Shown: positions 2,109-57,014, counted from the stretch's first letter. The stretch is 64,000 bases of DNA from Mytilus trossulus (GCF_036588685.1 NC_086382.1:48360001-48424000), one strand, 5' to 3'. Made by a program: numbers and translations. The notes: generated by a model from the letters alone, not told the origin.

Positions 2109-4732
2109 ACGGATGGTCCGGCGGACGCCCACTAACATGTTTAATCTTATCTCATTATTATGATTGCGCCTGTCCAAACTTCGGAGCCTGTCATTTAGTG
2201 TTTCTCGTTTGTTGCTGTGTTACTTTTTTTGTTTCGTTCATTTTTTTTTTTTTTTTTTTGCATAAAGTAAGCCATTTAGTTTTCTCGTTTGAATTGTTTA
2301 ACATATGTCAATTCGGGCCTTTTATAGCTGACTATGCGCTATGGGTTTTGCGTAATGTTGAAGCCGTACGGCGACACATACATTTGTATTTGGTTAATTT
2401 CTTGTTATTTGGTCTCTTGTAAATTGTTGTCTCATTAGAAGACTTGCTTCTATTCCCTTTCTTTTATTTATTTATTTCTTACTTTAATATTTATATGTTT
2501 ACTGATTGTCCTCTGCAGATGTCAGTATATTGGTAATCTCCTAGTTATAGCAGTAAAATTGTTAAAGGGTCAAAATTGAAAAAAAGGGACATGCAGCATG
2601 GCTATCTCATTGGCAATCCTTCCAAATCTGTTTTTTTTTTTATTAATATATATAAAGATATAAAATTTAAAAAAAAAACTAATCGGAAAACCACACGTAC
2701 TCTACTTGTTGGTTAAAGTTTATATTTGATGCTTCAAAACTCAAAACACAACAAAAAACTGAATAGAAACTTGAAAAATATATAATATATGATTAAATAA
2801 AATTGATATAACAAAAATTTTGAGTACAAAGTGCGACAGTAACCATGGTAACCATACGACACAAAAAAAATAATAACATTAAGCATATCATGTCAGCATA
2901 CGAAATTCACCTTCTGATTAAAAGACTGGCAATCATATCACATTTCTTCATTTGTATGTGGAGTCTGGTACTATACGTCTAAAACTAAAACGTCACAAAG
3001 TCTATCATGGTGTAATAAATGTAATTGAGACTATTCAAGATCTGCCAGCAACACTTAATATTAAGTACTATCTTAACACACTTTGGAAATTGTAATTCAT
3101 AAAACGCTCAGGGCATAAAATAACCTAAACACAACTAAAACCTTGTCTGAGAATGGAAAAACAATAGTAATTGTAAAAGCAATAATAAAAAAAAGGCATC
3201 GAGTTATAAATCACTTTTTATAAGTTGATGTAACAGTACATGTGTGAAACTTTATCACAGATAAAACCATCAAATTGCATCACTGTGATGTTTACTGATA
3301 AATAAGAGAGTGCATTATGATTATGTATACTGTTGTGTATGGTGATCATGTTCTTGATTTATAAGTGCAACAGTCTACGAACGTCTGTCATCACATATGA
3401 AGGTAATTAACGTGGGGTTTGATAGTCTTAAGGAAGTATAATTATTAAACTGACTCGGACCAGATATAATCTATTCCAGACGTTAATTTAAGGCGTATTG
3501 TAAAATAAAAATGTAATTTGTGGACTGGAGTGGTAAACTGGTTTAAAGAGTATTACTACCGAATACCAAAAAACGCTAACCGGTTAATCGGACCTTTTTA
3601 AAATTTTAATCAAATTGATATAAATGTGTACTGAAATCATTTGTAAATAATGTGAAATGATTGTATGAATAGAGTGGTACTTGATTAGACAGATCAATAG
3701 TTCAGTTTATTGATTAATCTTCTTAACCTTGAAAACATTTAAATTTCATTACTTAATAAGCACAAAGACAACTTGTCTGTCAACTCCATAAAACAAACAG
3801 ACAAACAATAGTATACATTACACAACAGAGAAAACTAAAGACTGGGGGCTCTCATGTGCTCCGGAAGGGTAAGTTGATTGATTGATTGATTGTTGGTTGC
3901 TTAACGTCCAGTGGCAAATATTTCATGCATATTCAGGACGAGAACAAGATCCTGCTCCATATGTGGCACGCGTCGTGTTCCTCATGTTACTCATGTTATT
4001 ACAAACCCGGTTGATAGTCTAATTCGGTAGATCACATTCATGAAAAGGGAAGGGGATTGTAGTTACGACGTAAGGAACATACATGTATCCGATATTATCT
4101 GTGAAACGGTTATTCCATAACAGTCAACCAACAAAAATATGGAATTCAATTAAACAAATCAGTACGACATTACCAGTATCAATTGATTTATCGTATACAG
4201 TTGTTTTCTTTAAAATCTTTAGATTACTAATAATTTACATATTAAATAACATTGCATTTCTTATAATGCACAGACACATTAGATAGTAAACTCCGATAGG
4301 AATCGAAAGTCACTGATTGTTATCCATGTTGTATATTGTCTGTCACAGTTTTTACACTATGCCAAAGCGATCTTTTTCATGTTGCATTCCAATCATAAAC
4401 ATCGAAGTCGTTTTCTAATTTTCTTATTACAAATAAATATTTTTTAGTTGTATAAACATAAATCGTTGCTTGATTGAAGTGTGCGGGTGTCAAAAATTCA
4501 AGGATTTTGAGATATGAACTGGATATTTATTGAATTAAACAAGAAAGTTAACAGAAGCACGTGAGATGCTAGAAAGAATGTGATTGTTCTATTTTCACTT
4601 TCGGATAATCAGAGGATGCATTCTTGAAATTTGTAGGTTTGTAGTGAGAGAATCAGTAATTAGTCTACATTAAGTGTGTATAATACAAAAACAATAAATC
4701 GAAATGCATAATTACGGCTCAATAATATCAAA

Positions 4733-7700
4733 ATGGGCCAAAATGTGGTGAAACGTGAAGTTAAAAAAGGTTTAGAACTTTATGAATTACGGAAACTAGA
4801 AAGTGCAATCGATGAATGGAATAAAGCTTTACACAGACTGAATGGAACTGGAGATAATCCTACTAAATTCGTCATTCTAGGGCATGTTTGTTGTGCTTAT
4901 TTTGATATGGGAAAGTATAGGTGTATAATAACGTATGCAAGGAAACAACTTGAAGTTGCAGAAACAATAGAACAGGAAACGGAAGCCTGTTTAAATTTAT
5001 CTAGAGCATACGAACGTTTAGGCGAGTATAGTATAGCGGAGGAGTACTGCAAAAAATGTCTCAGTCGTGACAGAAAGGACTCCAAGTGGGTCAAATATGC
5101 GTTTTTATTATACGGCAGACTTTATTTTAAACAGTGCCAATTTTACAAAGGACTTAAGAATCTTGAAGAAGCTAAAGCTTTTGAAAAATTGAGTAATGAT
5201 ATTGCATTTAGGATACTTGTAAATATATCATATGGGCAGTTTTACACATTTGTTAACGATATGGAGACAGGGTGTATGTATATACTTAAATGCATTGAAA
5301 TTTTAGAAACAAATACAGATTCATACATTACTAAGAAATTTCATAAAAGTATACAATTGGAACTTGCAAAGATTCATTTAGAAAATTCACGATTGAACGA
5401 AGCATTAGACACATGTGAGGTTAGTATTTTGTACTGAGTAGCTTATATTTTCTTTCATATACCTATGTGTTTCAAATGTCATCCCCCCAAAAAAAACAAA
5501 TCAAATGGTAGCACTTTACCCTCGCAGAAAAATAACGTCTTGTGTCTATTAATTAGCACTTTTTACATGTTCTGAATGCATTAAAGACAATTTATAAGCT
5601 CAGTGTATAAGTAGCTTTGATGTAAAGAAGCTGACTCAGTAAATTGAAGTACAAAGACCAGAAAGTGTTATGTAGAATTGATTTAAATAACACAAATTTC
5701 TGGCATTCTTTCATTCACATCTTGTGGTTAATTTCACCTGCTGGCAGAAATCGTTGCATGAAATTATCCTTGACAGACGATCGATGCTAACATTTACTAT
5801 AGTCATTCTGCCTTTTCTCATTTAGAACAAAAGTGTTAATTGTGCAATGTGGACATGTATTCTGTTTGTCATTAATAGTTGTTATAATTACGTAATTATG
5901 TGTTCAACGTAGAATATCTACTTATCAACAAATGCACTCAGTTTACTTTCATATGAAACTTTTAAGATATAGTTGTTAGTAGCCTTGTATATTATTGTTA
6001 TACGAAACAACGTTAAATTATGCATTTTCATAGAAATAACAGAAAATAGTGAGACGAAATACTTTGTTATTTTCCTAGTCCATTGTTATTCGAAAAAAAA
6101 CATGTTTTATTATTCAGATGATTTAATCCTCATAGTTGATGGAAATTAGCATGATTGCTAATTTTAAATTTGTTTATTTCTTTTCAAGTCTAGTTAATCT
6201 TTATCTGATGTAAATCGTTGTAAAGACTTTTAATTTACTCTGGAATATATCATGTTTTTAATTTACACTAAGAAGCATTGAAAAGAGTGATGAAAGATAC
6301 ATACATGCATGTAAAAGACACTATGTAAAAAAACTCGAAGTCGAAACTGAATAGACAACACAATGGCTAAAAAGAAAATAACCAAAAGACGAACAATAGT
6401 ACACAAAACACAACGCTTAAAACTAAAGATTCAATAATTGGGGGTGAGGGTGGTGAAATTCGTTCAACAATTTAGCCTTATCAAATGTTTAATAGCTTAA
6501 TGAGTAAAAAAGAAGATGTGGTATGATTGCCAATGAGTCAACTGTCTACAAAAGACAAAATGACACAGACTTTAAAACAACTATAGGTCACCGTACGGCC
6601 TTCAACAATGAGCAAAGCCCATACCGCAAAGTCAGCTATAAAAGGCCCGATAAGACAATGTAAAACAATTCAAACAAGAAAACTAACGGTCTTATTTATA
6701 TATAAAAAAAATTAACGAAAAACAAATATGTAACACATAAACAAACGACAACCACTGAATTACAGGATCCTGACTTGGGACAGACACATACATAAATAAT
6801 GTGGCGGAGTTAAACATGTTAGCGGGATTCCAACCCCCCTAACCTGGGACAGTTCAACGTAAGAACGAAGTTAGACAAAATGCAGGACATATAGATTTAA
6901 TGCCATCATAGTGGAAGTACATTTCTACATGTACTGAGTAAATGTCAAATGAACAAAAATAACTAGTTTCTGGCATCGATTTTCATATATGATGCATTGC
7001 AAATAAAATATTTCCCTAAAGTGTATTGTTTGCAGATTTCAAACACACTGCCTCTGGTTTATATTGTATATCATTGTCTGACATCTGGTGTTATAGAATG
7101 TGCATCACTGTATGTGTTGCATCTCGCAAAAGTTATTTACATATCATTATGTACATATGAATCAGTAGACAGTAGACATAAGCGGGAAGCTGGATAATTG
7201 AGGGCATTCTACTTTTGAAACTTAGCAGAAATAAATTGGTAGCGATAATTGAAACTTTAACCCGAAACTATGGAAAGCTATGACATTTTATGTTTATTGT
7301 CAAATATTACAGAAAATTATATATCTTTATACGCCTCCGTTATATTTTAGAATGTAATGAAGGACGCCATGGAAAGTCGAGATCGACAACTTCAGGGGGA
7401 ATGTCTGTATGTCTTTGCTGAAATCCACAGAAGAAGCAGAAGTTTTGAGGTACAAAAAATGTATACACATTTGATAATTTTTACATCAGTGAAGATGAGA
7501 CCAAAAATGACTTAGCCTACCCTATAATAAAGGACAAGGTTCACTTGCCAAAAACACAAACATTATCATAAAACATAAAAAAGGTCACAATTTTGTTCGT
7601 AAATGGGTCTTTTTCAAAAGCCCTTATACTATATAAATCAGTTTTTCATCATAAACTATCAAATTCTCGAAAGAAAGCCATTTTGGAAATTACTTTGCAC

Positions 7701-47733: not shown

Positions 47734-48410
47734 TCTATTTACACTCACAAAAGTCTAATAGATGTTCTATAACAGTGAATAAGTTTCACTGTGTTACAGA
47801 CTATTAAAAAATTTCGTTTAGCGAATCAAATCAATTTTCCTTATTAAATGAAAATATTTTGTAAATGTTTATAATATCAGATTAACAATTGATACCTTTA
47901 ATAATAAAATTATAAATTGGTTTTAAGTCACTTATATTTTATGTATGGTAACGGAAATATGAAACCATTATTTGAGTCTTATATTTTACATGTATGTATA
48001 GAAACGGAATAATGAATCCCTTATTTGAGATAAATACTCACATTTTCCTTTTTGATTTCGTACTAAAAAAAAATTAATCAAATTCAGTTCAAGGAAGTTG
48101 TGTTATAAAAACAATTGATTATTCAATTTTTGAAATTAAAGGACACCGGCCACTTCAAACAATCATTTGTAAAATAAATCGTAATGGGATGTAAACATCG
48201 TTAATTTCGTAGATAAGAGTGTAACACATATCGTATGTCTATAAAAACAGGTTGTATCAGCTTGAAATAATCCTTCTCCGGACATTGCCGATAATTGCCG
48301 ACATTTAATAAGCAACTTCCCGAAGGAGTGCGTGACGTCACTTGTGTTGTTTACATCCGCTAGACCACGAGAATCCTACTATTTCTAACTAAAATTTAAC
48401 AAAGTATACA

Positions 48411-49745
48411 ATGGATTTCGACGGACAGGACAGCGGCGATGAGCCATTTATAACTGCTGTTGATAATATTCAACCGTATCAGTTCGAGCCTGTTGTTCAT
48501 ATTGAACAAAACGAAGTGAGCAGTCAAAACCAATCGGACTCCTCTGAGGAAAATTCTGAAGCTGAATCTGACTCCTCTGACCTGCAAGACAGCCGGATGG
48601 ATAACTTGGCATGGTATGATTGATTGTCTAATACTGTCTAACATGATTAAATACTTCACATTACCAAGCCTCCTAGATGTAAACGTTTTCGTTCGTTTTT
48701 TGTTCTTCAACAAAAAAAGGGGGGTTGGCATGTATATCATACACATGTGCCTACAGTACTATACAGTCGCATATTTAACACTTCCTTACCTACATATAGA
48801 GTCAAATAAGACATAGAAACTATAAGTTTTAATTCAAAAAAAATATTCAATTGACACAATAATATTGAATTGATGTTAAAATGCATCATGCTATTCTTTT
48901 CACATTGATGCATTGTAACTTTTTTTTATGAATTACTTGACAGTTTTTTTTTTATAAATTTACATGATAATAGATCTTACTGAGGATTTATTGTAAAATA
49001 GTCAAATCTACATGTACGTTGTACAATAAATTTCCCAGGTGTGACTGTAACCACTGCGCTGCAATGCCCACTGTGGATGAATGCCTCTGTTGCAAGGAAG
49101 TTGGTCCAGTTGCAGAAAAAATGGAAGATGAGGACCTCGATTGTATTACAGATCATGAGGGGTTCACTGGAAACTGTTTAAATAGACATGTCATTGAGGT
49201 CTCTTTGTATGACTTTGTTGAAAGGCAGGGACCAATAGACGACAATGAACCAATTCATGAGTAAGTCCAATTTAATATTGATGATTAAAAATAAATTTAA
49301 CTTCACAACTATCATTTTTTATTTACAATTTTAATCATAAACAATATAAAAAAAAAGTCAAGACCAAGCTGATGATGAATTGCAAAAAGCTTAAGGCTAA
49401 ATAAATAAATCTGAGTAAACATACAAAATATACATGTATCATCATGAAAATATGAACTCTCATCTTGATCACTTTTTTAAGCATACTGATATATCAGTTA
49501 AAATAATATCCTTGTTCAAGCTTTGAGTATCACTGTATCACTTTGTAAAAAGAATATGAATAATTTGTTTAATATGCTATTTTTTCAGATTATATAGATA
49601 TGTTGCTTACAGACGGTTCACTCGTTGGATCTGGCATATACTTGGCAAAAAAAGAAGAAAGGTGATACCAGCATGTGCAGTATTAAAAATTAGGGAGGCA
49701 TTCCCGTCTGAGGACTTTACTGGATTCAAATATGCCAGGCCATGA
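48411..49745 (+). CDS. Kolobok second protein (KolX-like), P2X7 ballast-like Cys-rich domain, 193 aa; exons 48411-48613, 49039-49260, 49589-49745
   Basis: Spliced product: acidic leader with IQPYQFEP, then WCDCNHC..ECLCCKE..CITDHEGF..CLNRHVI..LYRYVAYRRFTRWIW..LGKKRRKVIPACAVLKIREAFPSEDFTGFK. Both introns are GT-AG, phase 2; the 582-nt CDS is open. Confidence 0.88.
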
Positions 49746-49929
49746 TCATTTGAAAAAAAATCATTGTGGTTAAAATCTTGGTAAATTTCATGTTTCCACA
49801 AACAGAGCTTTGAAAGATAAAAACACTCGACTACATGATGTAAATTGTGGTAAATACAATTCAAATGGTGAAGAGTTATATGGAACAAAGATCGCAAAAC
49901 ATATTTAAACAAATGTACGAGAAATGATG

Positions 49930-52900
49930 TCAGTTTCTAGCAAAACGACTTGTTCGATGTCTTATTAGCTCCTCCTTATCAAATTGAGGGTTTGATGCTG
50001 TTAGTGGAGGGAGTCTCTGATATACAATGTTAAAGTCCTCTAAGGCTTCTTTAATGCTTGATAAGTTATTTCGTCTGTCAAAAGTTCTTTTCAGAAGAGC
50101 TCCAACATAATCTACAAGACAAATAGAAACTATATGTAATAGCTCAGCCTCTAATTTACATAATTAACCGTGCAAATTTATAGATGCAATGACATTACTT
50201 GGATGTGCAGTCTGCATTTTTAGAATATTAACTTTTTCGATTCCAATAGTACAAAAAGAGATTCATAATACTGTAAATAAACCAACATTATTACAAAATA
50301 AATGTCTTGCTTACTGCTTTTTATGTTTTATTATTGAACCAGAAAGTTGAACGAAATTTTACCATAGGTCGCTTGAACTTTCTGCGGTTTGACAACACAT
50401 TGCTCTCCTTTTTTTGCTTTAGGGTACGACTTTTTCCATTTCAGGATGCCTGCTTTTGTGACAGCTTGCTGTCTATTTCCATTCTCATTGTAATGCAATG
50501 CAGCAATATAAATTCTGGAGAAGAAGAAAAAACATTACAAAATTATTATCAAATTTTAAGATAAGGAACCTACTAAACTTTTAATTTATTGCTTCAAAGT
50601 TTAAAATTAGCCACTGATGAGTTTATGTGTATACTATGTGGTGACCATGATTACAGTACAGGTATACACCTTTCATTAATTTGTTTGGTATAGGTTATTT
50701 TGACATATTGTACACAATCAATTACCTTGCTTTCATTGCATATTGGAAGAAGTGGGTGTTCTTTGGTGCATACTGGTTCACAAGAGAGTGATACACCTCG
50801 AGGCCATATGTCTGGTGCACTGGTGACAGCTTTTTTAAATCTTTTAGCAAGTATTTGCTTTCGATTACTTCCAGAACAAGTTTATGAGATTTGGAACCTA
50901 AAAATTAAAATAAAATATAATTTATTAAAACGATAATTTGGGCTAGATGCAAACGTTTAAACATATATGGCTACAAATGATGAGGCATTTTCTCAAAAAT
51001 AGTACAAAGCCATGAAACACAACAAGTGTCCCTTTTTCATAGAACATGAAAACCATTTGTACTTAAGATATTTGTTTACCTTGTTTAAGCCAAGCTCTTT
51101 GTTCCTCAAGCTCTCCATGGATACATTGCGGAAATACATCAGACTCATGGACATGTTTATTCATGATGTGGTTTGAAATTGATGTCCATTTGTGTATTTT
51201 TTCGTTCTGATCTTCCCCACTTGATGCAGCCACCCAATATGTATGGTTAACAATGCTCTTTATCCATGGTCTTATGTCTCCTGTGTCTTTTTTTTTGGCT
51301 CTGGTTTCCAACTTTTTTGATATTCCTGCAAGTAATGGAATAAAGAAAACATTTTGAAATGTATTTTTTATCAACAGCCTAAGAGTATTGCAGATTTATA
51401 AAATATGATTTATTCACAACTTGATAAGATAATACAATTAGTTCTAGTATGAAATTAATTGAGTAATACCTTTTGCTATATGCCATACATCGAAATAATG
51501 ATTTATTTCTGGATGGTTGTCCTTCATGAACTTCTTAATCATAACATGTCTATCTGTGACAAGTGTTGAGACTTCAATATGGTTAGTGTCTATAAGAAGA
51601 GATAAACCCCTCTTAAGTCCTTCCAATTCCATATGGGTTGACCCCTTAACTTCATTGGACTGAAAAAAATAAGCAAACACTGAAATTATTTGTCAACATG
51701 ATTTATGAAAACAATAAGATTTGGGGGAAATTCATGAAATACTGGCCACTGGACAACATCGATAAATCTGTAGTAAGTGTGTTTAACTATTTCCTTCTAA
51801 GCATTTATACAGATCTTATTTAAATCTGAAATATATATACATATAAACAATGAGATTTGGGTTATATTCATGAAATACTTGCCACTGGACAGCAACAATC
51901 AATCCATTTTAAGTAGTATGCATGTTAAGCTGTATTTATTTGTAATCATTTTAATACAGATCTAATTTAGATTTAAATTGAGAAATCCATCAAGAGTTAA
52001 TTAATGCAAACCTGAACAAGCTGAATGTCCAATATTTTATTTGTGTTCAAGTCCATCAGAGTGTAACTGCCATATTTAGCACTATAACCAGGACTGTCGC
52101 ACCTTCCGTCGCCACCAAGTACTACTTGTTTATCTGGACCTGCAATATTAAAAAGGGTAATGCGTGAAGATTATAACACTCTTATTCATATAATTAACAA
52201 TAAAATTATTCTGTACAGAATATATATTAACAAGATACCTAATTTGACAGAGGGAGAAAATGAGGATAGAAATAAACATATTCCAAGAATAAATAAAAAG
52301 ATACGTGTATTCCAGGAAATAAATAAAAAGATATGTGAGTATATTAAAAGAGGTGACACTACGAAGAAATATACATACCTTGCAAGGAAGCTATTAGATC
52401 TGCTTGCTGGGAGTCGAATTCATAGATAACTGCACATGATGTGTATGCTGTTTGCAGTCTTCTAACCGAGCGTTCACTAATGCCTTTCAGTTTCATTTGA
52501 TCAAACAGTCTTACAATCTTTGCTGTATTATTCCCGCTAAACATTATGGCACTTGCAAGCAAAAGATTTCCCCATGGTAGTCTTTCATGACAGTTTTGGG
52601 ATTTCCACTTGTAGACGTGTCCAAAAGCACATACAGAAGATGTAGATATCATTGTCCCTCTACTGAATTCAATAATTGGAATGCATCGATTGTTACACTC
52701 TCTACATACTGATAGTAACTGAAATAGTGCTGTTTCAGAGACCATGTAATACTTTTCTTCAACTGGATCATTACATTCTTCCATTCTGTAATTGCTTGTT
52801 TCTTCCTCATCGTCAGATCCATACTCATCGTCTCCATCTTCTTCCTCGGACTCGTTATAAATATAATCCGGATCATTATCATATTCATCTACATCATCTT

Positions 52901-54155
52901 CATCATCATCACTCTCATCATTGTCATCCTTGTTTTGTTCGGTCGCTGCCGGTGCAAGGCTACTGCTTGTAATTTTTCCGATTATCGTTCTGTTCTTCGA
53001 TGTGGCGACTTTACTTGCTGAATCAATATCTGAAGGGTTACACTGAATGCCTTTAGACTTTCTCTTGGGTTTTAATGTTTGGTTTCTTCTAGTTCTCTGC
53101 GGAATGGGATCTGTTTGATTTTTCTGTATTTTCATGTTTGTGTAATCGGTGTTAAAAGATTTTGACACAAATGTTTTTGGTATATCTACCGGAATTTCTA
53201 CCTCTTCCTGAATCTCCATACTGTCAGCTGCGGGTGGCGATTCAGTTTCAGTGTCAATGGAGTCGACGGACTTATCTAATGATTCATTAAAGGCCTCTTG
53301 AAGAACCTATAGTAAAATTAAATTTTTATTTTAAAAATTGCTTTCATCAATAAATTATACATGTATAATTCACCTTTTTGGTCGTTGTATTCGGGAAAGG
53401 ACCGGGTCGTAGATTTCCTGTGGAATTGAATTTGTTTTCTTTAGTTAGACTCACGAAACCTTTACTCGTTTATTTTATTTTATAATAGATTTAGAATGTC
53501 AATATACGGACTTCTTCTACAAGCGACTGATTTCAGAAAAAAAAAGTTTACGAGAAAAATATAAATCCCAGAAGTCCTGAACATTTTAGTATGACTTTGA
53601 TAATGTTTTATTGGATCGTTATATAATGTAAATGGATGTATATACCTTTTCATGTAAATAAAATAAATGCTTTGACAATTTTTACTTGAACCAAAACGGG
53701 AAGAAAGATATACAAATATAATAAATAATAATAATTAAAACCATACAGATAAAACCAAAAACATATTTTTCACAAAAGTTTCAATGGATAATAAAGAGAA
53801 TCAATTGTACCTGACGTTTCTGTCTTTTTTCGAAGGCCGACCTAGGCTTTTTAGGAGAAGATGGTCCTTTTTCTGCATCTACAACTACAGGAATGTCGGG
53901 CATGGCGTCATCTTTTAGAGCTGCCTTTGCACCCGGATATCCCAATTCTGAAAGTCTTTCAGGGTGCCTGCTATACTGATTTAGGGTAAAATGTTTAGAA
54001 CAAATTCTGCTGTGCTTAGACGGTGTAAAGTCCTGTCGTTTACAATAGTGAACCCAAGAACGATTTCTCTGAGAATCTTTCGGAAAAGTAAACCAATATA
54101 TATTTTTGTCACATTGAGAATTGCTATTGCAACCGTAAACCACACAATACGGCAT
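49930..54155 (-). CDS. Kolobok transposase with N-terminal THAP zinc finger and DDE core, 780 aa; exons 54155-53811, 53306-52379, 52139-52012, 51659-51470, 51325-51080, 50897-50726, 50514-50363, 50111-49930
   Basis: THAP CVVYGC..FP..W..ICSKHF..AMP; acidic linker; CREC..CAFGH; catalytic motifs GDGRCDSPGYSAKYG, VTDRH, FDVWH and TYGLEVYHS; LHYNEN; C-terminal SRF. All seven introns are GT-AG with consistent phase, giving an open 2343-nt CDS. Confidence 0.9.
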
Positions 54156-57014
54156 ATTTACACTTATATTTACGAAATAAAAAAATAATTACTTCTTACT
54201 TTTAAATAATTCTACTACGTGAAGATTTGTATTACATAAAACTAAAACATGGATGTAATATGAGACATGAATGGAACCCTATACTCATGGAATTTCTGTA
54301 TTATCTATATAGTATTACCACTGAGAATATACAGCTGGTAACACAAGTGATGTCATAGCCGTGAGCCTCGTTATCATGTCTGAAAATATGCATACAAGGG
54401 CGATCAAGGCCATCTGTGTATACATTACTGATTATCACATTCCCTGATAAGAAATACACATAACAACATGAAGATATCGATTTTATTAACTATAAAGGTT
54501 TTATTTTACACATGATTGTTTGAAGTGGCCGGTGTCCTTTAAAACCAAATAAAAATAAGCTACTGCTTTTTTCTGAAGTTTTTATACTCACAACTGAATT
54601 TTACGTCGTTTTTATGAAAAAAATCAGAATCGCTGTACATTTCAAGTTTTAAATATTGCATGTTCTTTTTTCTTTTGCTTATAAAATTGCAGCTTTGTTT
54701 TTATGCTTTTTATTCTTCATATAGTTGAAGCGTTTCCCTCGAGTTTGGTCTGTAACCTGGGTTTGTTTTTTTCTCAATCGATAAATGACTTCTAAACACC
54801 GGTATACTAGTACTGTTGCATTTTTTTCGATAAAAGTACATTTCTCTCAATGTATCCTCTCACATTGCACTGATGAAACTTAGTTGGTAATATATGGCCA
54901 TTTTACTTAAAACAGATTCAGTACTAAGAAATTTTTCAAGACCGTATGTGGGTTGCTGTGTTATAAGCAAATAGCATATGGACCAGAACGACTATCTCAA
55001 AAAGTCAAATAAAAACACAGCTGAAGGTCATACGATACAGTTTTGATCCCACGTTGAACTTATTTTACAAACATGTGCATACAAGCTCTTTTTCACCTTA
55101 ATGTTTTAAGAATGTAATAAACACAACCGGATGTTTTCCTGCAGATGTCGAATCATGATCAGTTGCGCAAGTATGGACACTACATTTAAGCTTACGACAG
55201 CTCTACATTTGGATTGTGAATGAATATTTAAAATAGATTATTATCTAATTAATAAAAAAAATATGTAAGCAAATCTGAACCACAAACACGATTATGTAAA
55301 CAATAAACATTAACACACGTAACAAAAATATGATACCATATAGCAACTGTGACATCTACCTCAATTTAACACTCATGTCATATCTAGTGCCCCTTTAAGA
55401 CATTTTGATGTTATTATTACGGGTTCATTGGATAAGTTTGAGTTATTTTCCTTTGAATATAAAAATGGTTTTACATAGTACACTTACATTAGAAATGATA
55501 AAATTAATGAAAAAAGTCTAAATTAGATTTGATGTAATACAATGTATATCTATTTTCGAGTTATAATAATAGTTCCAAATATTTTTTCTTTCTTTTATCG
55601 CACACTAATATAGATGTCACAAACTTAATCTACACAATGTAATGTAATGAAACATATTCTTTAATAAGATATATATTATTTTCTAGATAAAAGAATAAAC
55701 TTCATAATCAGAGCTCTACTTCATAATTTTATTTATTCATATGTATAGCATTATGAAAATTTGTTTATACATAATACTAAATAATCCGACCAAAATTCTT
55801 TAAACAATTTACCAAAGTGAAGGGAAAACATCAAAATGTTATCTATCATTTAATACGATGTCTTTTAAAATGACTTATATCCCCTTGTACAGAAATGGAT
55901 GAATTCATCAAAACTTGAATTCATTCGAAAGGAAATTAACTCAACAACAAGAAAAGCGAAAATCTTGAAAATTGAACTTGATCTTCATTTAGGCACTGGA
56001 AACAAAATATATAAACTAATAAAAAATCTTTAAAGCGTTCTCATGTCCATGAAGAAACACTGTTTGGCAAAAAGACTGCCCGCCCGCCCGATAGCCCAAC
56101 CGCCTGCCCGATAGCCCACCCACTAGCCTGACATCCCCAAATCAATAACCGACTATTTTTTCTTCGACAATCCGGTTTAAATTATGACTTCATGTGCTAC
56201 GTTAAATAAATTGGATAGACATTTAAGGTTTCTACTTATTTTTTTTTCTTTTCAGTCCGACTGATAAAAATCAGTTGAAAAAAATGCATCTTTTCCTGAT
56301 ATGTAGTGTCGTATTTCTCCTCTTATATTTGATGTGTTTCCCTCAGTTTTAGTGTGTAACCCGGACTTGTATTTTTTTCTCAATCGATTTATGAAATCGA
56401 ACAGCGGTATACTACTGTTGCCTTTGTTTATGTCATAGTTTGACGTCGCGAAAAATAACAATTAATATTGGCAACGTAATTAGCTCCCCTGTGGCTTTAT
56501 CGGTTGCCAAATTTACACACTGTTGTTTGACATCAGTTTAGAACTTTTGCTTAGAAATACCTCGTGATCTTTAATCTTTGTTTATAAATAAGAGAAAATA
56601 CATTGGAAATACTAATAATTTCTTGTGTACAATATGGAAATTAGTATGGCGTTAATTATCACTGAACTAGTATATATTTGTTGAGGGGCCAGCTAAAGGA
56701 CGCCTCCGGGTGCGGGAATTTCTCGCTATATACATTGAAGACCTGTTGGTGAACTTCTGCTGTTGTTTTTTCTATGGTCGGGTTGTTGTCTCTTTGACAC
56801 ATTCCCCAGGTCCATTCTCAATTTTAGAGTTGTCCTTCTTGTCATACTAACAGTTCACGATAACTACCAAAGAATGACAACATAAATACTACATTTAAAC
56901 AGTAATCAACTAAAAATTTACACCTCACGTGTACATGGAAATAATTGCGTTTCATATGTGTCAGATTTGGCAAGCAAATTCAAACACTATGAGGGTAACG
57001 GACATATATTTTAG

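What the first reader, a model, noticed from the sequence alone, without database searches (positions are those of the whole stretch)
48140..54538. Intact two-gene Kolobok transposon: THAP-DDE transposase plus a partner protein, probably recently active
Seen: perfect TTAA TSD, 38/39 identical TIRs, and two multi-exon genes (8 and 3 exons) whose splice sites and phases all reconstruct into open frames (780 aa and 193 aa). This sits in a window where every other TE is decayed. The ORF track shows only disconnected fragments. Established: Kolobok elements have TTAA TSDs, RR...YY termini and encode a transposase plus a second protein, KolX, of unclear function. Inference: this is a young, possibly autonomous copy of a two-component transposition system, usable to test what the partner protein does.
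Basis: partly seen in the sequence, partly recalled or inferred. Interest (0 to 1): 0.85.

Follow-up and report, generated by a model that had tools for sequence, protein, structure and literature searches.

The report
Intact two-gene Kolobok transposon, mussel
This is a complete, transcribed and very recently mobile cut-and-paste transposon of the known Kolobok (Kol0) type in a Mytilus mussel. It carries a transposase gene and the known partner gene KolX, so it is an ordinary new member of a described family, but a convenient one for testing what KolX does.

Summary
A 6,399-bp element lies at 48140-54538, flanked by TTAA on both sides, with 39-bp inverted ends matching at 38 of 39 bases. It has two convergent genes: an 8-exon THAP-DDE transposase of 780 aa and a 3-exon partner of 193 aa. 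All nine introns are GT-AG, and all nine appear as exact joints in spliced contigs from three public runs.

A second copy 2.56 Mb away is 100% identical over all 6,399 bp. It sits in unrelated flanks with its own TTAA duplication, so the element moved very recently.

The interpretation also holds. The transposase has every Kolobok signature and reads almost like the curated Kol0 members Kolobok-1_BF and Kolobok-2_DR. The partner is KolX, a homologue of the P2X7 ballast domain. That link was published in 2022, and NCBI already lists this exact protein as "P2X purinoceptor 7-like" from Mytilus trossulus.

The element is not unique. The genome holds several other Kol0 families with the same layout, and the scan noted some of them on other DNA.

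The new lead is a conserved N-terminal Y-x-F-E-P motif in KolX. In a paralogous pair, a model docks it on the transposase (score 0.64, best control 0.36).

Verdict: new member of a known kind, moderate interest.

The parts
48136..48139 (.). Left target-site duplication, TTAA
   Evidence: The identical copy L002 has its own TTAA on both sides.
48140..48178 (+). Left terminal inverted repeat, 39 bp, starting AGGACACCGG
   Evidence: 38 of 39 bases match the right end. The first bases, AGGACA, are the same as those of Xenopus XKol A3/A4 ends listed in PMC6004289.
48333..48348 (+). Left subterminal motif TGACGTCACTTGTGTT. It contains the palindrome TGACGTCA, lies 193 bp inside the end and 63 bp upstream of the KolX ATG.
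   Evidence: (pair I23). An inverted copy lies at the mirror position near the right end. Its role as a promoter element or transposase-binding site is inferred.
48411..48613 (+). KolX exon 1: an acidic, Ser-rich N-terminus that carries the conserved motif PYQFEPV (residues 22-28)
   Evidence: The joint 48613|49039 is seen in X15.
49039..49260 (+). KolX exon 2: the zinc-cysteine blocks WCDCNHC, ECLCC and CIT
   Evidence: (P2RX7_C profile positions 82-127, weak), plus (block match to published KolX). The joint 49260|49589 is seen in X15 and X16.
49589..49745 (+). KolX exon 3 with the stop codon: AYRRF...LGKK...IPAC...IREAFP...GFKY
   Evidence: P2RX7_C E 4.2e-8, 33.8 bits against a cut-off of 23.5; only P2X7 chains are hit, at residues 546-594.
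49486..49929 (-). 3' untranslated region of the transposase transcript. It runs antisense across KolX exon 3, so the two transcripts converge and overlap.
   Evidence: contig X17 record 11 runs unspliced from 49486 to 50111 and then uses transposase intron 7; an ATTAAA signal on the - strand lies at 49568-49573. The strand of a contig is not shown, so the overlap is inferred.
49930..50111 (-). Transposase exon 8, including the stop codon
50363..50514 (-). Transposase exon 7
50726..50897 (-). Transposase exon 6, carrying the catalytic E646 (LEVYHS)
51080..51325 (-). Transposase exon 5: the PWIKSIVNH helix and the H2CH zinc finger (H588, H590, C598, H600)
51470..51659 (-). Transposase exon 4: the second catalytic D503 (TDRH) and the D-x-x-H signature (D524-H527)
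   Evidence: (weak MULE match, E 2.8e-4)
52012..52139 (-). Transposase exon 3: the first catalytic D435 (GGDGRCDSPG)
   Evidence: (80% identical to the scallop protein P0152)
52379..53306 (-). Transposase exon 2: a linker, an acidic tract, a C-x2-C...C-x3-H module and the start of the catalytic domain
   Evidence: 1,135 homologues at E <= 0.001.
53811..54155 (-). Transposase exon 1: the THAP domain (C4, C9, C52, H55) and basic KKPR/KRQK stretches
   Evidence: (THAP E 1.9e-15). The joint 53811|53306 is seen in X16.
54340..54355 (-). Right subterminal motif: an inverted copy of TGAC(G/A)TCACTTGTGTT, 183 bp inside the right end and upstream of the transposase ATG
54500..54538 (-). Right terminal inverted repeat, 39 bp
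54539..54542 (.). Right target-site duplication, TTAA

Best explanation
The stretch is an intact, probably autonomous DNA transposon of the Kolobok superfamily, Kol0 lineage, in a Mytilus mussel genome (M. trossulus by the database names). It moves by cut-and-paste into TTAA.

Transposase: the 780-aa protein should recognise the ends through its N-terminal THAP zinc finger. It should cut and rejoin DNA with an RNase-H-fold DDE core (D435, D503, E646). That core carries the D-x-x-H signature and an H2CH zinc finger in the helical insertion before the E.

Gene layout: the two genes are read inwards from the two ends and converge, with overlapping 3' ends.

KolX: the 193-aa partner is a stand-alone homologue of the zinc-binding, possibly guanine-nucleotide-binding ballast domain of the P2X7 receptor, behind an acidic tail. 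I infer that KolX is a direct cofactor or regulator of the transposase. It would dock through its conserved N-terminal Y-x-F-E-P motif onto the Kol0-specific helix (PWIxSIxNH) and zinc finger beside the active site.

Shown: the anatomy, the splicing, the family membership and recent transposition. Inferred: present activity, end binding by THAP, and the KolX-transposase contact.
For: Ends and TSD.

Gene models: open frames of 780 and 193 aa, with nine GT-AG introns. All nine joints are seen in spliced contigs of three runs from three studies. The KolX model is identical to NCBI protein P0228.

Recent movement: copy L002 is 100% identical over 6,399 bp, has unrelated flanks and its own TTAA on both sides.

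Transposase identity:
- THAP E 1.9e-15.
- The core reads block for block like Kolobok_1_BF1p, Kolobok_2_DR_1p and Kolobok_1_XT1p in the curated alignment.
- A 786-aa scallop homologue is colinear with all eight exons.
- The model of a paralogue's transposase (pLDDT 78) is closest to the ISCth4, P-element and Hermes transposases.

KolX identity:
- P2RX7_C at 33.8 bits, above its 23.5-bit cut-off.
- The KolX profile hits only P2X7 in the PDB, E 1.3e-14.
- The top 14 Foldseek matches are all P2X7.
- The blocks match published KolX.

Conserved layout: the same KolX -> <- transposase arrangement recurs in about ten further places in the genome, and two of these families have TTAA plus AGG... ends.

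Contact: complex prediction on the paralogous pair in L025 scored 0.64 in all three runs against a best control of 0.36. That mark was reached by 51 of 78 solved complexes and 2 of 108 mismatched pairs. The runs agree in at least 28% of contacts, and the partner's pLDDT is at least 73.

The interface peptide is the motif found in 65 of 79 KolX-like proteins, from cnidarians to fish. The transposase side falls largely on invariant or nearly invariant residues: W349, W374, N380, H381, H406, C421 and H423.
Against: No excision, empty site or new insertion was observed, so activity today is not shown.

The spliced contigs come from other animals and differ by about 1% from the window. Two of the three carry a one-base insertion in exon 5, as the broken chromosome-5 copies do. 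Expression of the intact copy itself is therefore not shown.

The family is tiny, with 12 ends in 1.3 Gb and no miniature derivatives, so it may be tightly silenced.

The contact rests on a model of a paralogous pair (about 27-68% identical per exon for the transposase, 39-48% for KolX), folded without alignments. The interface is a short acidic peptide, a class the test is not calibrated for. One control with KolX kept scored 0.36. The basic RKKK patch of that interface is not conserved in the window's transposase.
Confidence: 0.88

Rival explanations
1. The element is structurally intact but no longer mobile. It would be a young copy that is silenced or carries a subtle defect, and the second identical copy records its last jump.
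For: The copy number is very low and there are no miniature derivatives. The other copies are broken or fragmentary. Two of the three spliced transcript contigs carry the frame-shifting extra base seen in the dead copies.
Against: There are zero differences in 6,399 bp between the two copies. All catalytic and zinc residues are present. Both reading frames are open. The X15 contig has no extra base in exon 5.
Confidence: 0.3
2. The two identical copies arose by segmental duplication or gene conversion, not by transposition.
For: Both lie on the same chromosome, 2.56 Mb apart. The two chromosome-5 copies are indeed one insertion duplicated together with its flank.
Against: Identity between the two chromosome-10 copies stops exactly at the inverted repeats. 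The flanks are unrelated and each copy has its own TTAA on both sides. The window's left flank and most of its right flank occur once in the genome.
Confidence: 0.03
3. It is a piggyBac-type element, the other superfamily with TTAA duplications, or a domesticated THAP gene pair rather than a Kolobok transposon.
For: The TTAA duplication is shared with piggyBac. A few piggyBac families also carry KolX-like genes (PMC9587614).
Against: The termini are AG...CT, not the piggyBac type. No exon matches the piggyBac transposase family in Pfam, only weak MULE matches. The core matches curated Kolobok sequences. Inverted ends, a TSD and a second insertion argue against domestication.
Confidence: 0.02
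4. KolX does not touch the transposase. It would act on the host or on DNA independently, for example as a nucleotide- or zinc-dependent regulator or a silencing decoy, and the modelled interface would be an artefact of placing an acidic peptide on a conserved basic surface.
For: The control with KolX kept and the transposase replaced still scored 0.36. Peptide and disordered partners are outside the test's calibration. The ballast domain itself is not in the modelled interface.
Against: The complex score passes the mark. The motif is conserved across phyla. It lies outside the part aligned with P2X7, where the domain has left the transposon. The docking helix is a signature of the KolX-bearing Kol0 group in the curated alignment.
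Confidence: 0.45

Closest known systems
Kol0 lineage of the Kolobok superfamily (Kolobok-1_XT, Kolobok-1_BF, Kolobok-2_DR, Kolobok-1_NV; Kapitonov and Jurka 2007, as cited in Kojima and Bao 2022, PMC9587614)
   Same: - TTAA duplication and 5'-RR...YY-3' termini.
- THAP plus a DDE core with D-x-x-H and a zinc finger before the E.
- No CCHC finger after the first D.
- A second gene, KolX.
- Near-identical core blocks: GDGRCDSPG, LVQSNEV..S.HME.EGLKR, TDRH, FDVWH..KG.SKKLE, PWIKSI.NH, HVH...FP.C.H and LE.(Y/F)HS.
   Different: The host is a mytilid mussel; the paper's list for Kol0 names vertebrates, annelids, cnidarians and sponges. Both genes are split by introns, seven and two. The two genes converge with overlapping 3' ends. 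Two identical copies point to very recent movement.
Xenopus XKol / T2-MITE Kolobok elements (Hikosaka et al. 2018, PMC6004289)
   Same: TTAA target and AGG... termini. The window's AGGACA start equals that of XKol subfamilies A3 and A4. The THAP, DDE and H2CH motifs are shared.
   Different: Xenopus has huge miniature-element families and many domesticated transposases. Here the family has about seven loci and no miniature derivatives. The AVPTIF box of THAP is only partly kept, as AMPDI.
Cytoplasmic ballast domain of the P2X7 receptor (PDB 6U9V and relatives; Pfam PF20478) and zebrafish Nanor
   Same: - The zinc-coordinating cysteine blocks.
- The A-Y-R, I-P-x-C and F-P blocks.
- The equivalents of rat R546 and R578, the two GDP-contacting residues said to be conserved beyond deuterostomes.
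   Different: KolX is a free 193-aa protein, not a channel tail. It has an acidic N-terminus with the Y-x-F-E-P motif, which lies outside the part that aligns with P2X7. The equivalents of rat H547, R574 and K583 are Y, V and S.
PIF/Harbinger two-gene transposons (transposase plus a Myb-like partner that binds it); comparison from my own knowledge
   Same: A cut-and-paste element in which a second, separately encoded small protein is conserved beside the transposase, and is here predicted to bind it.
   Different: The superfamily, the target site and the partner fold are all different. The partner's role in Kolobok has not been tested.

Membership tests
Kolobok superfamily | [quoted passage not shown] | tested here: met
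   TTAA flanks both sides of the window copy and of the independent copy L002. All 12 ends in the genome lie next to TTAA.
Kolobok superfamily | Termini 5'-RR ... YY-3' (unlike piggyBac) | tested here: met
   The ends are AGGAC... and ...GTCCT. The definition is from PMC9587614.
Kolobok superfamily | [quoted passage not shown] | tested here: met
   D435, D503 and E646, with D524-V-W-H527. These residues are invariant or nearly so in a 30-sequence alignment. The model of a paralogue has an RNase-H fold closest to the ISCth4, P-element and Hermes transposases.
Kolobok superfamily | Zinc finger between C/DxxH and the catalytic E (present in all lineages but Kolobok1) | tested here: met
   H588-x-H590-x7-C598-x-H600. 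It is aligned with HTFRKN..C.H and HVHNN..C.H of the curated members.
Kolobok superfamily | Transposase groups with curated Kolobok transposases | tested here: inconclusive
   I compared it by eye with supplementary Data S5 of PMC9587614, and the blocks are nearly identical to Kolobok_1_BF1p and Kolobok_2_DR_1p. I built no tree, because the curated sequences have no reference usable in the tools.
Kol0 lineage | Encodes a second protein, KolX | tested here: met
   The 193-aa three-exon gene on the opposite strand matches the published KolX blocks.
Kol0 lineage | No CCHC zinc finger after the first catalytic D (that finger marks KolobokP, E, D and 5) | tested here: met
   Only one cysteine (C438) lies between D435 and D503.
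KolX / P2RX7_C (ballast) family | Sequence match to the family profile | tested here: met
   Exon 3 scores 33.8 bits against a cut-off of 23.5, E 4.2e-8, at profile positions 146-191. Exon 2 is colinear at positions 82-127 but weak. A KolX profile that includes these exons hits only P2X7 in the PDB, E 1.3e-14.
KolX / P2RX7_C (ballast) family | Seven conserved zinc-coordinating cysteines | tested here: met
   C69, C71, C74, C83, C85/C86, C103 and C171 fall in the WCxCxxC, ECxCC, CIT and IPxC blocks (Fig. S6).
KolX / P2RX7_C (ballast) family | Ballast fold | tested here: inconclusive
   A paralogous KolX was folded with low confidence (pLDDT 54). Even so, the top 14 Foldseek matches are all P2X7, with E 0.004-0.1.
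KolX / P2RX7_C (ballast) family | Binds two zinc ions and a guanine nucleotide | not testable with these tools
   Only the equivalents of rat R546 and R578 are kept.
piggyBac superfamily (considered) | piggyBac-type DDD transposase | tested here: not met
   No exon matches the piggyBac transposase family in Pfam; only THAP and weak MULE matches appear.
Autonomous, currently active transposon | Intact ends and intact genes | tested here: met
Autonomous, currently active transposon | Independent identical insertions | tested here: met
Autonomous, currently active transposon | Insertion polymorphism, empty sites or excision footprints | not tested
The assembly holds no empty allele.
Autonomous, currently active transposon | Transposition in an assay | not testable with these tools
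   This needs a bench experiment.

The most novel reading that the evidence does not exclude
KolX is a direct, motif-mediated partner of the Kolobok transposase. A short N-terminal peptide (consensus G-Y-x-F/L-E-P-E-Y-T-E-E-E-L; PYQFEPV in this element) is conserved from cnidarians to fish. It lies outside the part aligned with P2X7. It would dock onto the Kol0-specific helix (PWIxSIxNH) and the H2CH zinc finger next to the active site. The zinc- and nucleotide-binding ballast domain would thereby be tethered to the transposase, for example to gate cutting by nucleotide or metal state. I did not find this motif or contact in the two papers that treat KolX and ballast homologues.
Probability: 0.35. 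Interest if true: 0.6.

Novelty: new member of a known kind. Interest (0 to 1): 0.42.

Why it matters
To my knowledge, no Kolobok element has been shown to transpose in an assay, and the role of KolX is unknown. KolX matters beyond transposons because, according to Kojima and Bao (2022), it is the likely source of the ballast domain of the P2X7 receptor.

This locus gives a natural, unbroken, transcribed two-gene element with defined ends and defined coding sequences, and a sister copy with no differences. It therefore suits excision and integration assays with and without KolX.

The conserved Y-x-F-E-P motif and the modelled docking site give that experiment a specific prediction. As a genomic object it is otherwise ordinary: the family is described, the protein is already in NCBI, and the same genome holds several similar elements.

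Tried and rejected
Exons were searched by reference. The joined translation was made only inside local scripts, to check frame and length, to locate motifs and to test identity with P0228.
- Pfam on single transposase exons gave only THAP and a sub-threshold MULE match. No Pfam family names Kolobok, so classification rests on the curated alignment in a paper.
- PDB search with KolX exon 2 alone gave only a spurious hydrolase match.
Gene neighbourhoods of the scallop homologue could therefore not be read.
- No empty allele exists in the assembly; the left flank and most of the right flank occur once.
- There are no canonical AATAAA or ATTAAA signals downstream of the KolX stop on the + strand within 450 bp.
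- I found no inverted ends for the paralogous pair in L025 that was used for the complex model. Its boundaries are undetermined.
- The intact 780-aa transposase of the chromosome-10 copies was not among the listed database proteins. Only the truncated 557-aa product of the chromosome-5 copy (P0332) and close relatives from M. galloprovincialis and M. edulis (P0310, P0331) were there.
- The window's own KolX and transposase could not be tested as a complex.
- Searching the paper library for FEPEY together with P2X7 found nothing.
- Rejected readings: piggyBac, segmental duplication and domestication (see the rival explanations).

Full report
**What is there.** The window holds a 6,399-bp element at 48140-54538. 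TTAA lies directly outside both ends (48136-48139 and 54539-54542). The ends read AGGACACCGG... and ...CCGGTGTCCT, and they form a 39-bp inverted repeat with one mismatch at position 28. About 190 bp inside each end lies an inverted copy of TGAC(G/A)TCACTTGTGTT (48333-48348 and 54340-54355). On the left this motif contains the palindrome TGACGTCA. Each copy sits upstream of the gene that starts at that end, so it could be a shared promoter element or a transposase-binding site. That role is inference.

**Gene models.** On the - strand, eight open segments join through seven GT-AG introns into one frame of 780 aa. On the + strand, three segments join through two GT-AG introns into 193 aa. The joined frames were computed only in local scripts.

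**Transcript evidence.** Contigs of four public runs were laid on 48250-54249. All nine predicted introns appear as exact joints: 48613|49039 and 49260|49589 for the partner, and 50111|50363, 50514|50726, 50897|51080, 51325|51470, 51659|52012, 52139|52379 and 53306|53811 for the transposase.
- Six of the seven transposase joints are seen in X15, X16 and X17, which come from three studies. The seventh, 53306|53811, is seen in X16.
- The genome has no spliced copy, so these contigs derive from RNA.
- They are about 99% identical to the window, so they show how the family is spliced in other animals.
- X16 and X17 carry an extra T after 51287, the same frame-shifting change as the chromosome-5 copies. 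X15 does not.
- Contig X17-11 runs unspliced from 49486 into transposase exon 8, and a - strand ATTAAA lies at 49568. The transposase 3' UTR therefore probably runs antisense over KolX exon 3. This is inferred, since contigs carry no strand.

**Independent annotation.** The 193-aa model equals the NCBI protein P0228, "P2X purinoceptor 7-like [Mytilus trossulus]", residue for residue. The contig lengths reported for P0228, P0225 and P0179 equal those of this genome's contigs C10, C13 and C7. The genome is therefore the M. trossulus assembly, as earlier notes of the scan say.

**Copies and age.** The whole-genome search found these copies:
- A second copy on the same chromosome (C10:45843479-45849877, - strand) is 100% identical over all 6,399 bp. 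Its flanks are unrelated to the window's, and it has its own TTAA on each side. This is transposition, not duplication.
- Two 98% copies on chromosome 5 share one flank, so they are one insertion that was later duplicated. Both have KolX exon 1 interrupted by a nested insertion of about 8.7 kb and a one-base insertion in transposase exon 5 that ends the frame near residue 557-559. NCBI's 557-aa protein P0332 is that truncated product.
- The remaining loci are fragments at 88-96% identity.
- The end sequence occurs only 12 times in 1.3 Gb, so there has been no burst of miniature derivatives.

Zero differences between two 6.4-kb copies means the last jump was very recent. If one assumes a rate of a few changes per 10^9 sites per year, it happened within roughly 10^5 years. 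That figure is my rough inference, not a measurement.

Close relatives exist as proteins in M. galloprovincialis (P0310, about 99% in exon 2) and M. edulis (P0331). M. coruscus has one at about 91% (P0001). DNA runs under six organism labels hold 65-84% of the element's words.

**Classification of the transposase.** Exon 1 is a THAP domain (E 1.9e-15) with C4, C9, C52 and H55. The core has GGD435GRCDSPG, TD503RH, FD524VWH527, PWIKSIVNH, H588-x-H-x7-C-x-H600 and LE646VYHS.

Kojima and Bao (2022, PMC9587614) define Kolobok by three traits. These are TTAA duplications, RR...YY termini, and a DDD/E core with C/DxxH followed by a zinc finger before the E. Their Kol0 group is defined by a second protein, KolX. 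All of these are met here.

Their supplementary alignment lets the core be read side by side:
- Kolobok_1_BF1p has LLGDGRCDSPG, TDRH, YDVFH, LGPWIKFIKNHLWY, HTFRKN..C.H and LEVYHN.
- Kolobok_2_DR_1p has LQLIQSNEVGGSYHMEKEGLKRCL, FYDVWHFEKGLSKKLE, WLKSIKNHVYWSATSS and HVHNNPLFPKCEH.
- The window's protein reads almost the same.
- The CCHC finger that marks KolobokP, E and D is absent.

I could not build a tree, because those curated sequences have no reference usable in the tools.

Other support:
- An exhaustive profile search found 1,135 homologues.
- A 786-aa scallop protein is colinear with all eight exons, and the matches end close to the exon boundaries.
- A model of a paralogous transposase from this genome (pLDDT 78, above 90 in the core) is closest to the ISCth4 (IS256), P-element and Hermes transposases. 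This fits the published kinship of Kolobok with MuDR, P and hAT.

**The partner is KolX.**
- Exon 3 matches Pfam P2RX7_C above the curated cut-off (33.8 bits against 23.5). Exon 2 matches the preceding part of the profile weakly.
- Exon 3 alone hits only P2X7 chains in the PDB, at residues 546-594.
- A profile of mussel, oyster and sea-cucumber KolX-like proteins plus the window's exons hits only P2X7, E 1.3e-14, over P2X7 residues 459-597.
- The blocks WCxCxxC, (A/P)MPT, ECxCC, CIT, AYRxF, LGxxxR and IPxC match the published KolX alignment.
- The equivalents of rat R546 and R578 are kept, as in other invertebrate ballast homologues.
- That KolX has the ballast fold, and is the likely source of the P2X7 tail, is already published.

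**The element is one of several.** Searching the genome with P2RX7_C and with a transposase exon shows a repeated pattern. About ten further places have a KolX-like gene and a Kolobok transposase 3-4.5 kb apart on opposite, converging strands.
- One family (C6 type) is 10.9 kb long. It gave eight identical-scoring hits, and the two copies compared are 99.4% identical. It has TTAA and ends AGGAGAAGGAAACC, and the first twelve bases equal a Xenopus XKol A2 end.
- Another (C13 type) is about 5.7 kb long, with ends AGGAAAAGGCCATG.
- Earlier notes of the scan list such elements on other pieces of this genome.

The conserved layout argues that KolX is an integral part of the element, not a passenger.

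**How KolX might work.** A paralogous Kol0 pair without introns in the reading frames used (L025: KolX 199 aa, transposase 600 aa) allowed one complex prediction.
- It scored 0.64 in each of three runs against a best control of 0.36.
- That mark was reached by 51 of 78 solved complexes and 2 of 108 mismatched pairs.
- The runs agree in at least 28% of contacts, and the partner's pLDDT is at least 73.

The model supports binding but does not show it. The calibration is mainly microbial, peptides are untested, and one control that kept KolX reached 0.36.

The interface is not the ballast domain. On the KolX side it is residues 18-39, the peptide FDECGQFGYILEPEY. On the transposase side it comprises:
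- V348-W349 of D-x-x-H;
- the helix P373-R387 (PWIxSIxNH);
- H406;
- C421-H423 of the zinc finger;
- a basic patch at 432-435;
- residues 468 and 470, next to the catalytic E.

Most of these transposase positions are invariant or nearly so in 30 homologues, and most are kept in the window's protein. The basic patch is not.

The peptide motif [YF]-x-hydrophobic-E-P lies upstream of the cysteine block in 65 of 79 KolX-like proteins. These include ones from Clytia, Ciona, cyprinid fish and a sea cucumber. The window's KolX has PYQFEPV at residues 22-28. The motif lies outside the part aligned with P2X7. The docking helix is a signature of the Kol0 group in the curated alignment and is absent from lineages without KolX.

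I did not find the motif in the passages I read of the two relevant papers, or by a text search. This is a lead, not a finding.

**Verdict.** The kind is known: the Kol0 architecture dates from 2007, the KolX-ballast link from 2022, and the protein is already in NCBI. The value of the locus is practical. It is an unbroken, transcribed, just-moved natural copy with defined coding sequences, usable to test whether Kolobok transposes and what KolX contributes. It now comes with a specific prediction about a docking motif.

Noticed in passing
L013+L019 (G000:C6:20680011-20690951) and L014+L020 (G000:C7:9162100-9173049): A second Kol0 family of 10.9 kb. The two copies compared are 99.4% identical and lie in different flanks. 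It has TTAA and ends AGGAGAAGGAAACC. KolX has two exons, and the transposase open frame is 631 aa. Eight places in the genome gave identical scores.
   Followed up: partly
L015+L021 (G000:C13:36430943-36436611) and L016+L022 (G000:C10, about 10627637-10632719): A third Kol0 family of about 5.7 kb, with TTAA and ends AGGAAAAGGCCATG. The transposase is a single open frame of 637-686 aa. The two copies compared are about 99.3% identical.
   Followed up: partly
L025:1564-2163 (+) and L025:3491-5293 (-): An intronless KolX (199 aa) converges on a 600-aa Kolobok transposase frame that has no THAP domain in the same frame. No inverted ends were found within the 16 kb around it, so its status as element or domesticated pair is open.
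   Followed up: partly
Protein cluster of P0132: A 625-626-aa THAP protein, colinear with six of the window's eight transposase exons, is present once per genome in Poecilia, Xiphophorus, Gambusia and Poeciliopsis at 90% identity or more. This looks like a domesticated Kolobok transposase in poeciliid fishes.
   Followed up: no
window 52801-52928 (element positions 4662-4789): The acidic-tract coding part of transposase exon 2 matches, at about 70%, long tandem arrays with a 66-bp step on contigs C11, C22, C39, C14 and C10.
   Followed up: no
G000:C5:85488611-85497372 and C5:72373597-72382357: The two chromosome-5 copies carry the same nested insertion of about 8.7 kb in KolX exon 1, with about 160 bp of the element missing. 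I did not look at what the inserted DNA is.
   Followed up: no
Protein P0297: A KolX-like protein with the motif DGRPYLFEPEYTDEEL is filed under Vibrio parahaemolyticus. It closely resembles fish sequences in the same list (P0248, P0279), so it is probably host DNA in a bacterial assembly.
   Followed up: no
Proteins P0218 and P0220: Gene models in M. edulis (named ATP6D, with a V-ATPase subunit d domain) and M. coruscus (named as a reverse-transcriptase protein) contain a KolX N-terminus. They are probably chimeric annotations across a Kolobok insertion.
   Followed up: no
window 53096-53367: One contig of the metatranscriptome run X18 skips 270 bases here, with 12 other letters in between and no GT-AG ends. 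This is probably a deletion variant in another animal rather than an intron.
   Followed up: no
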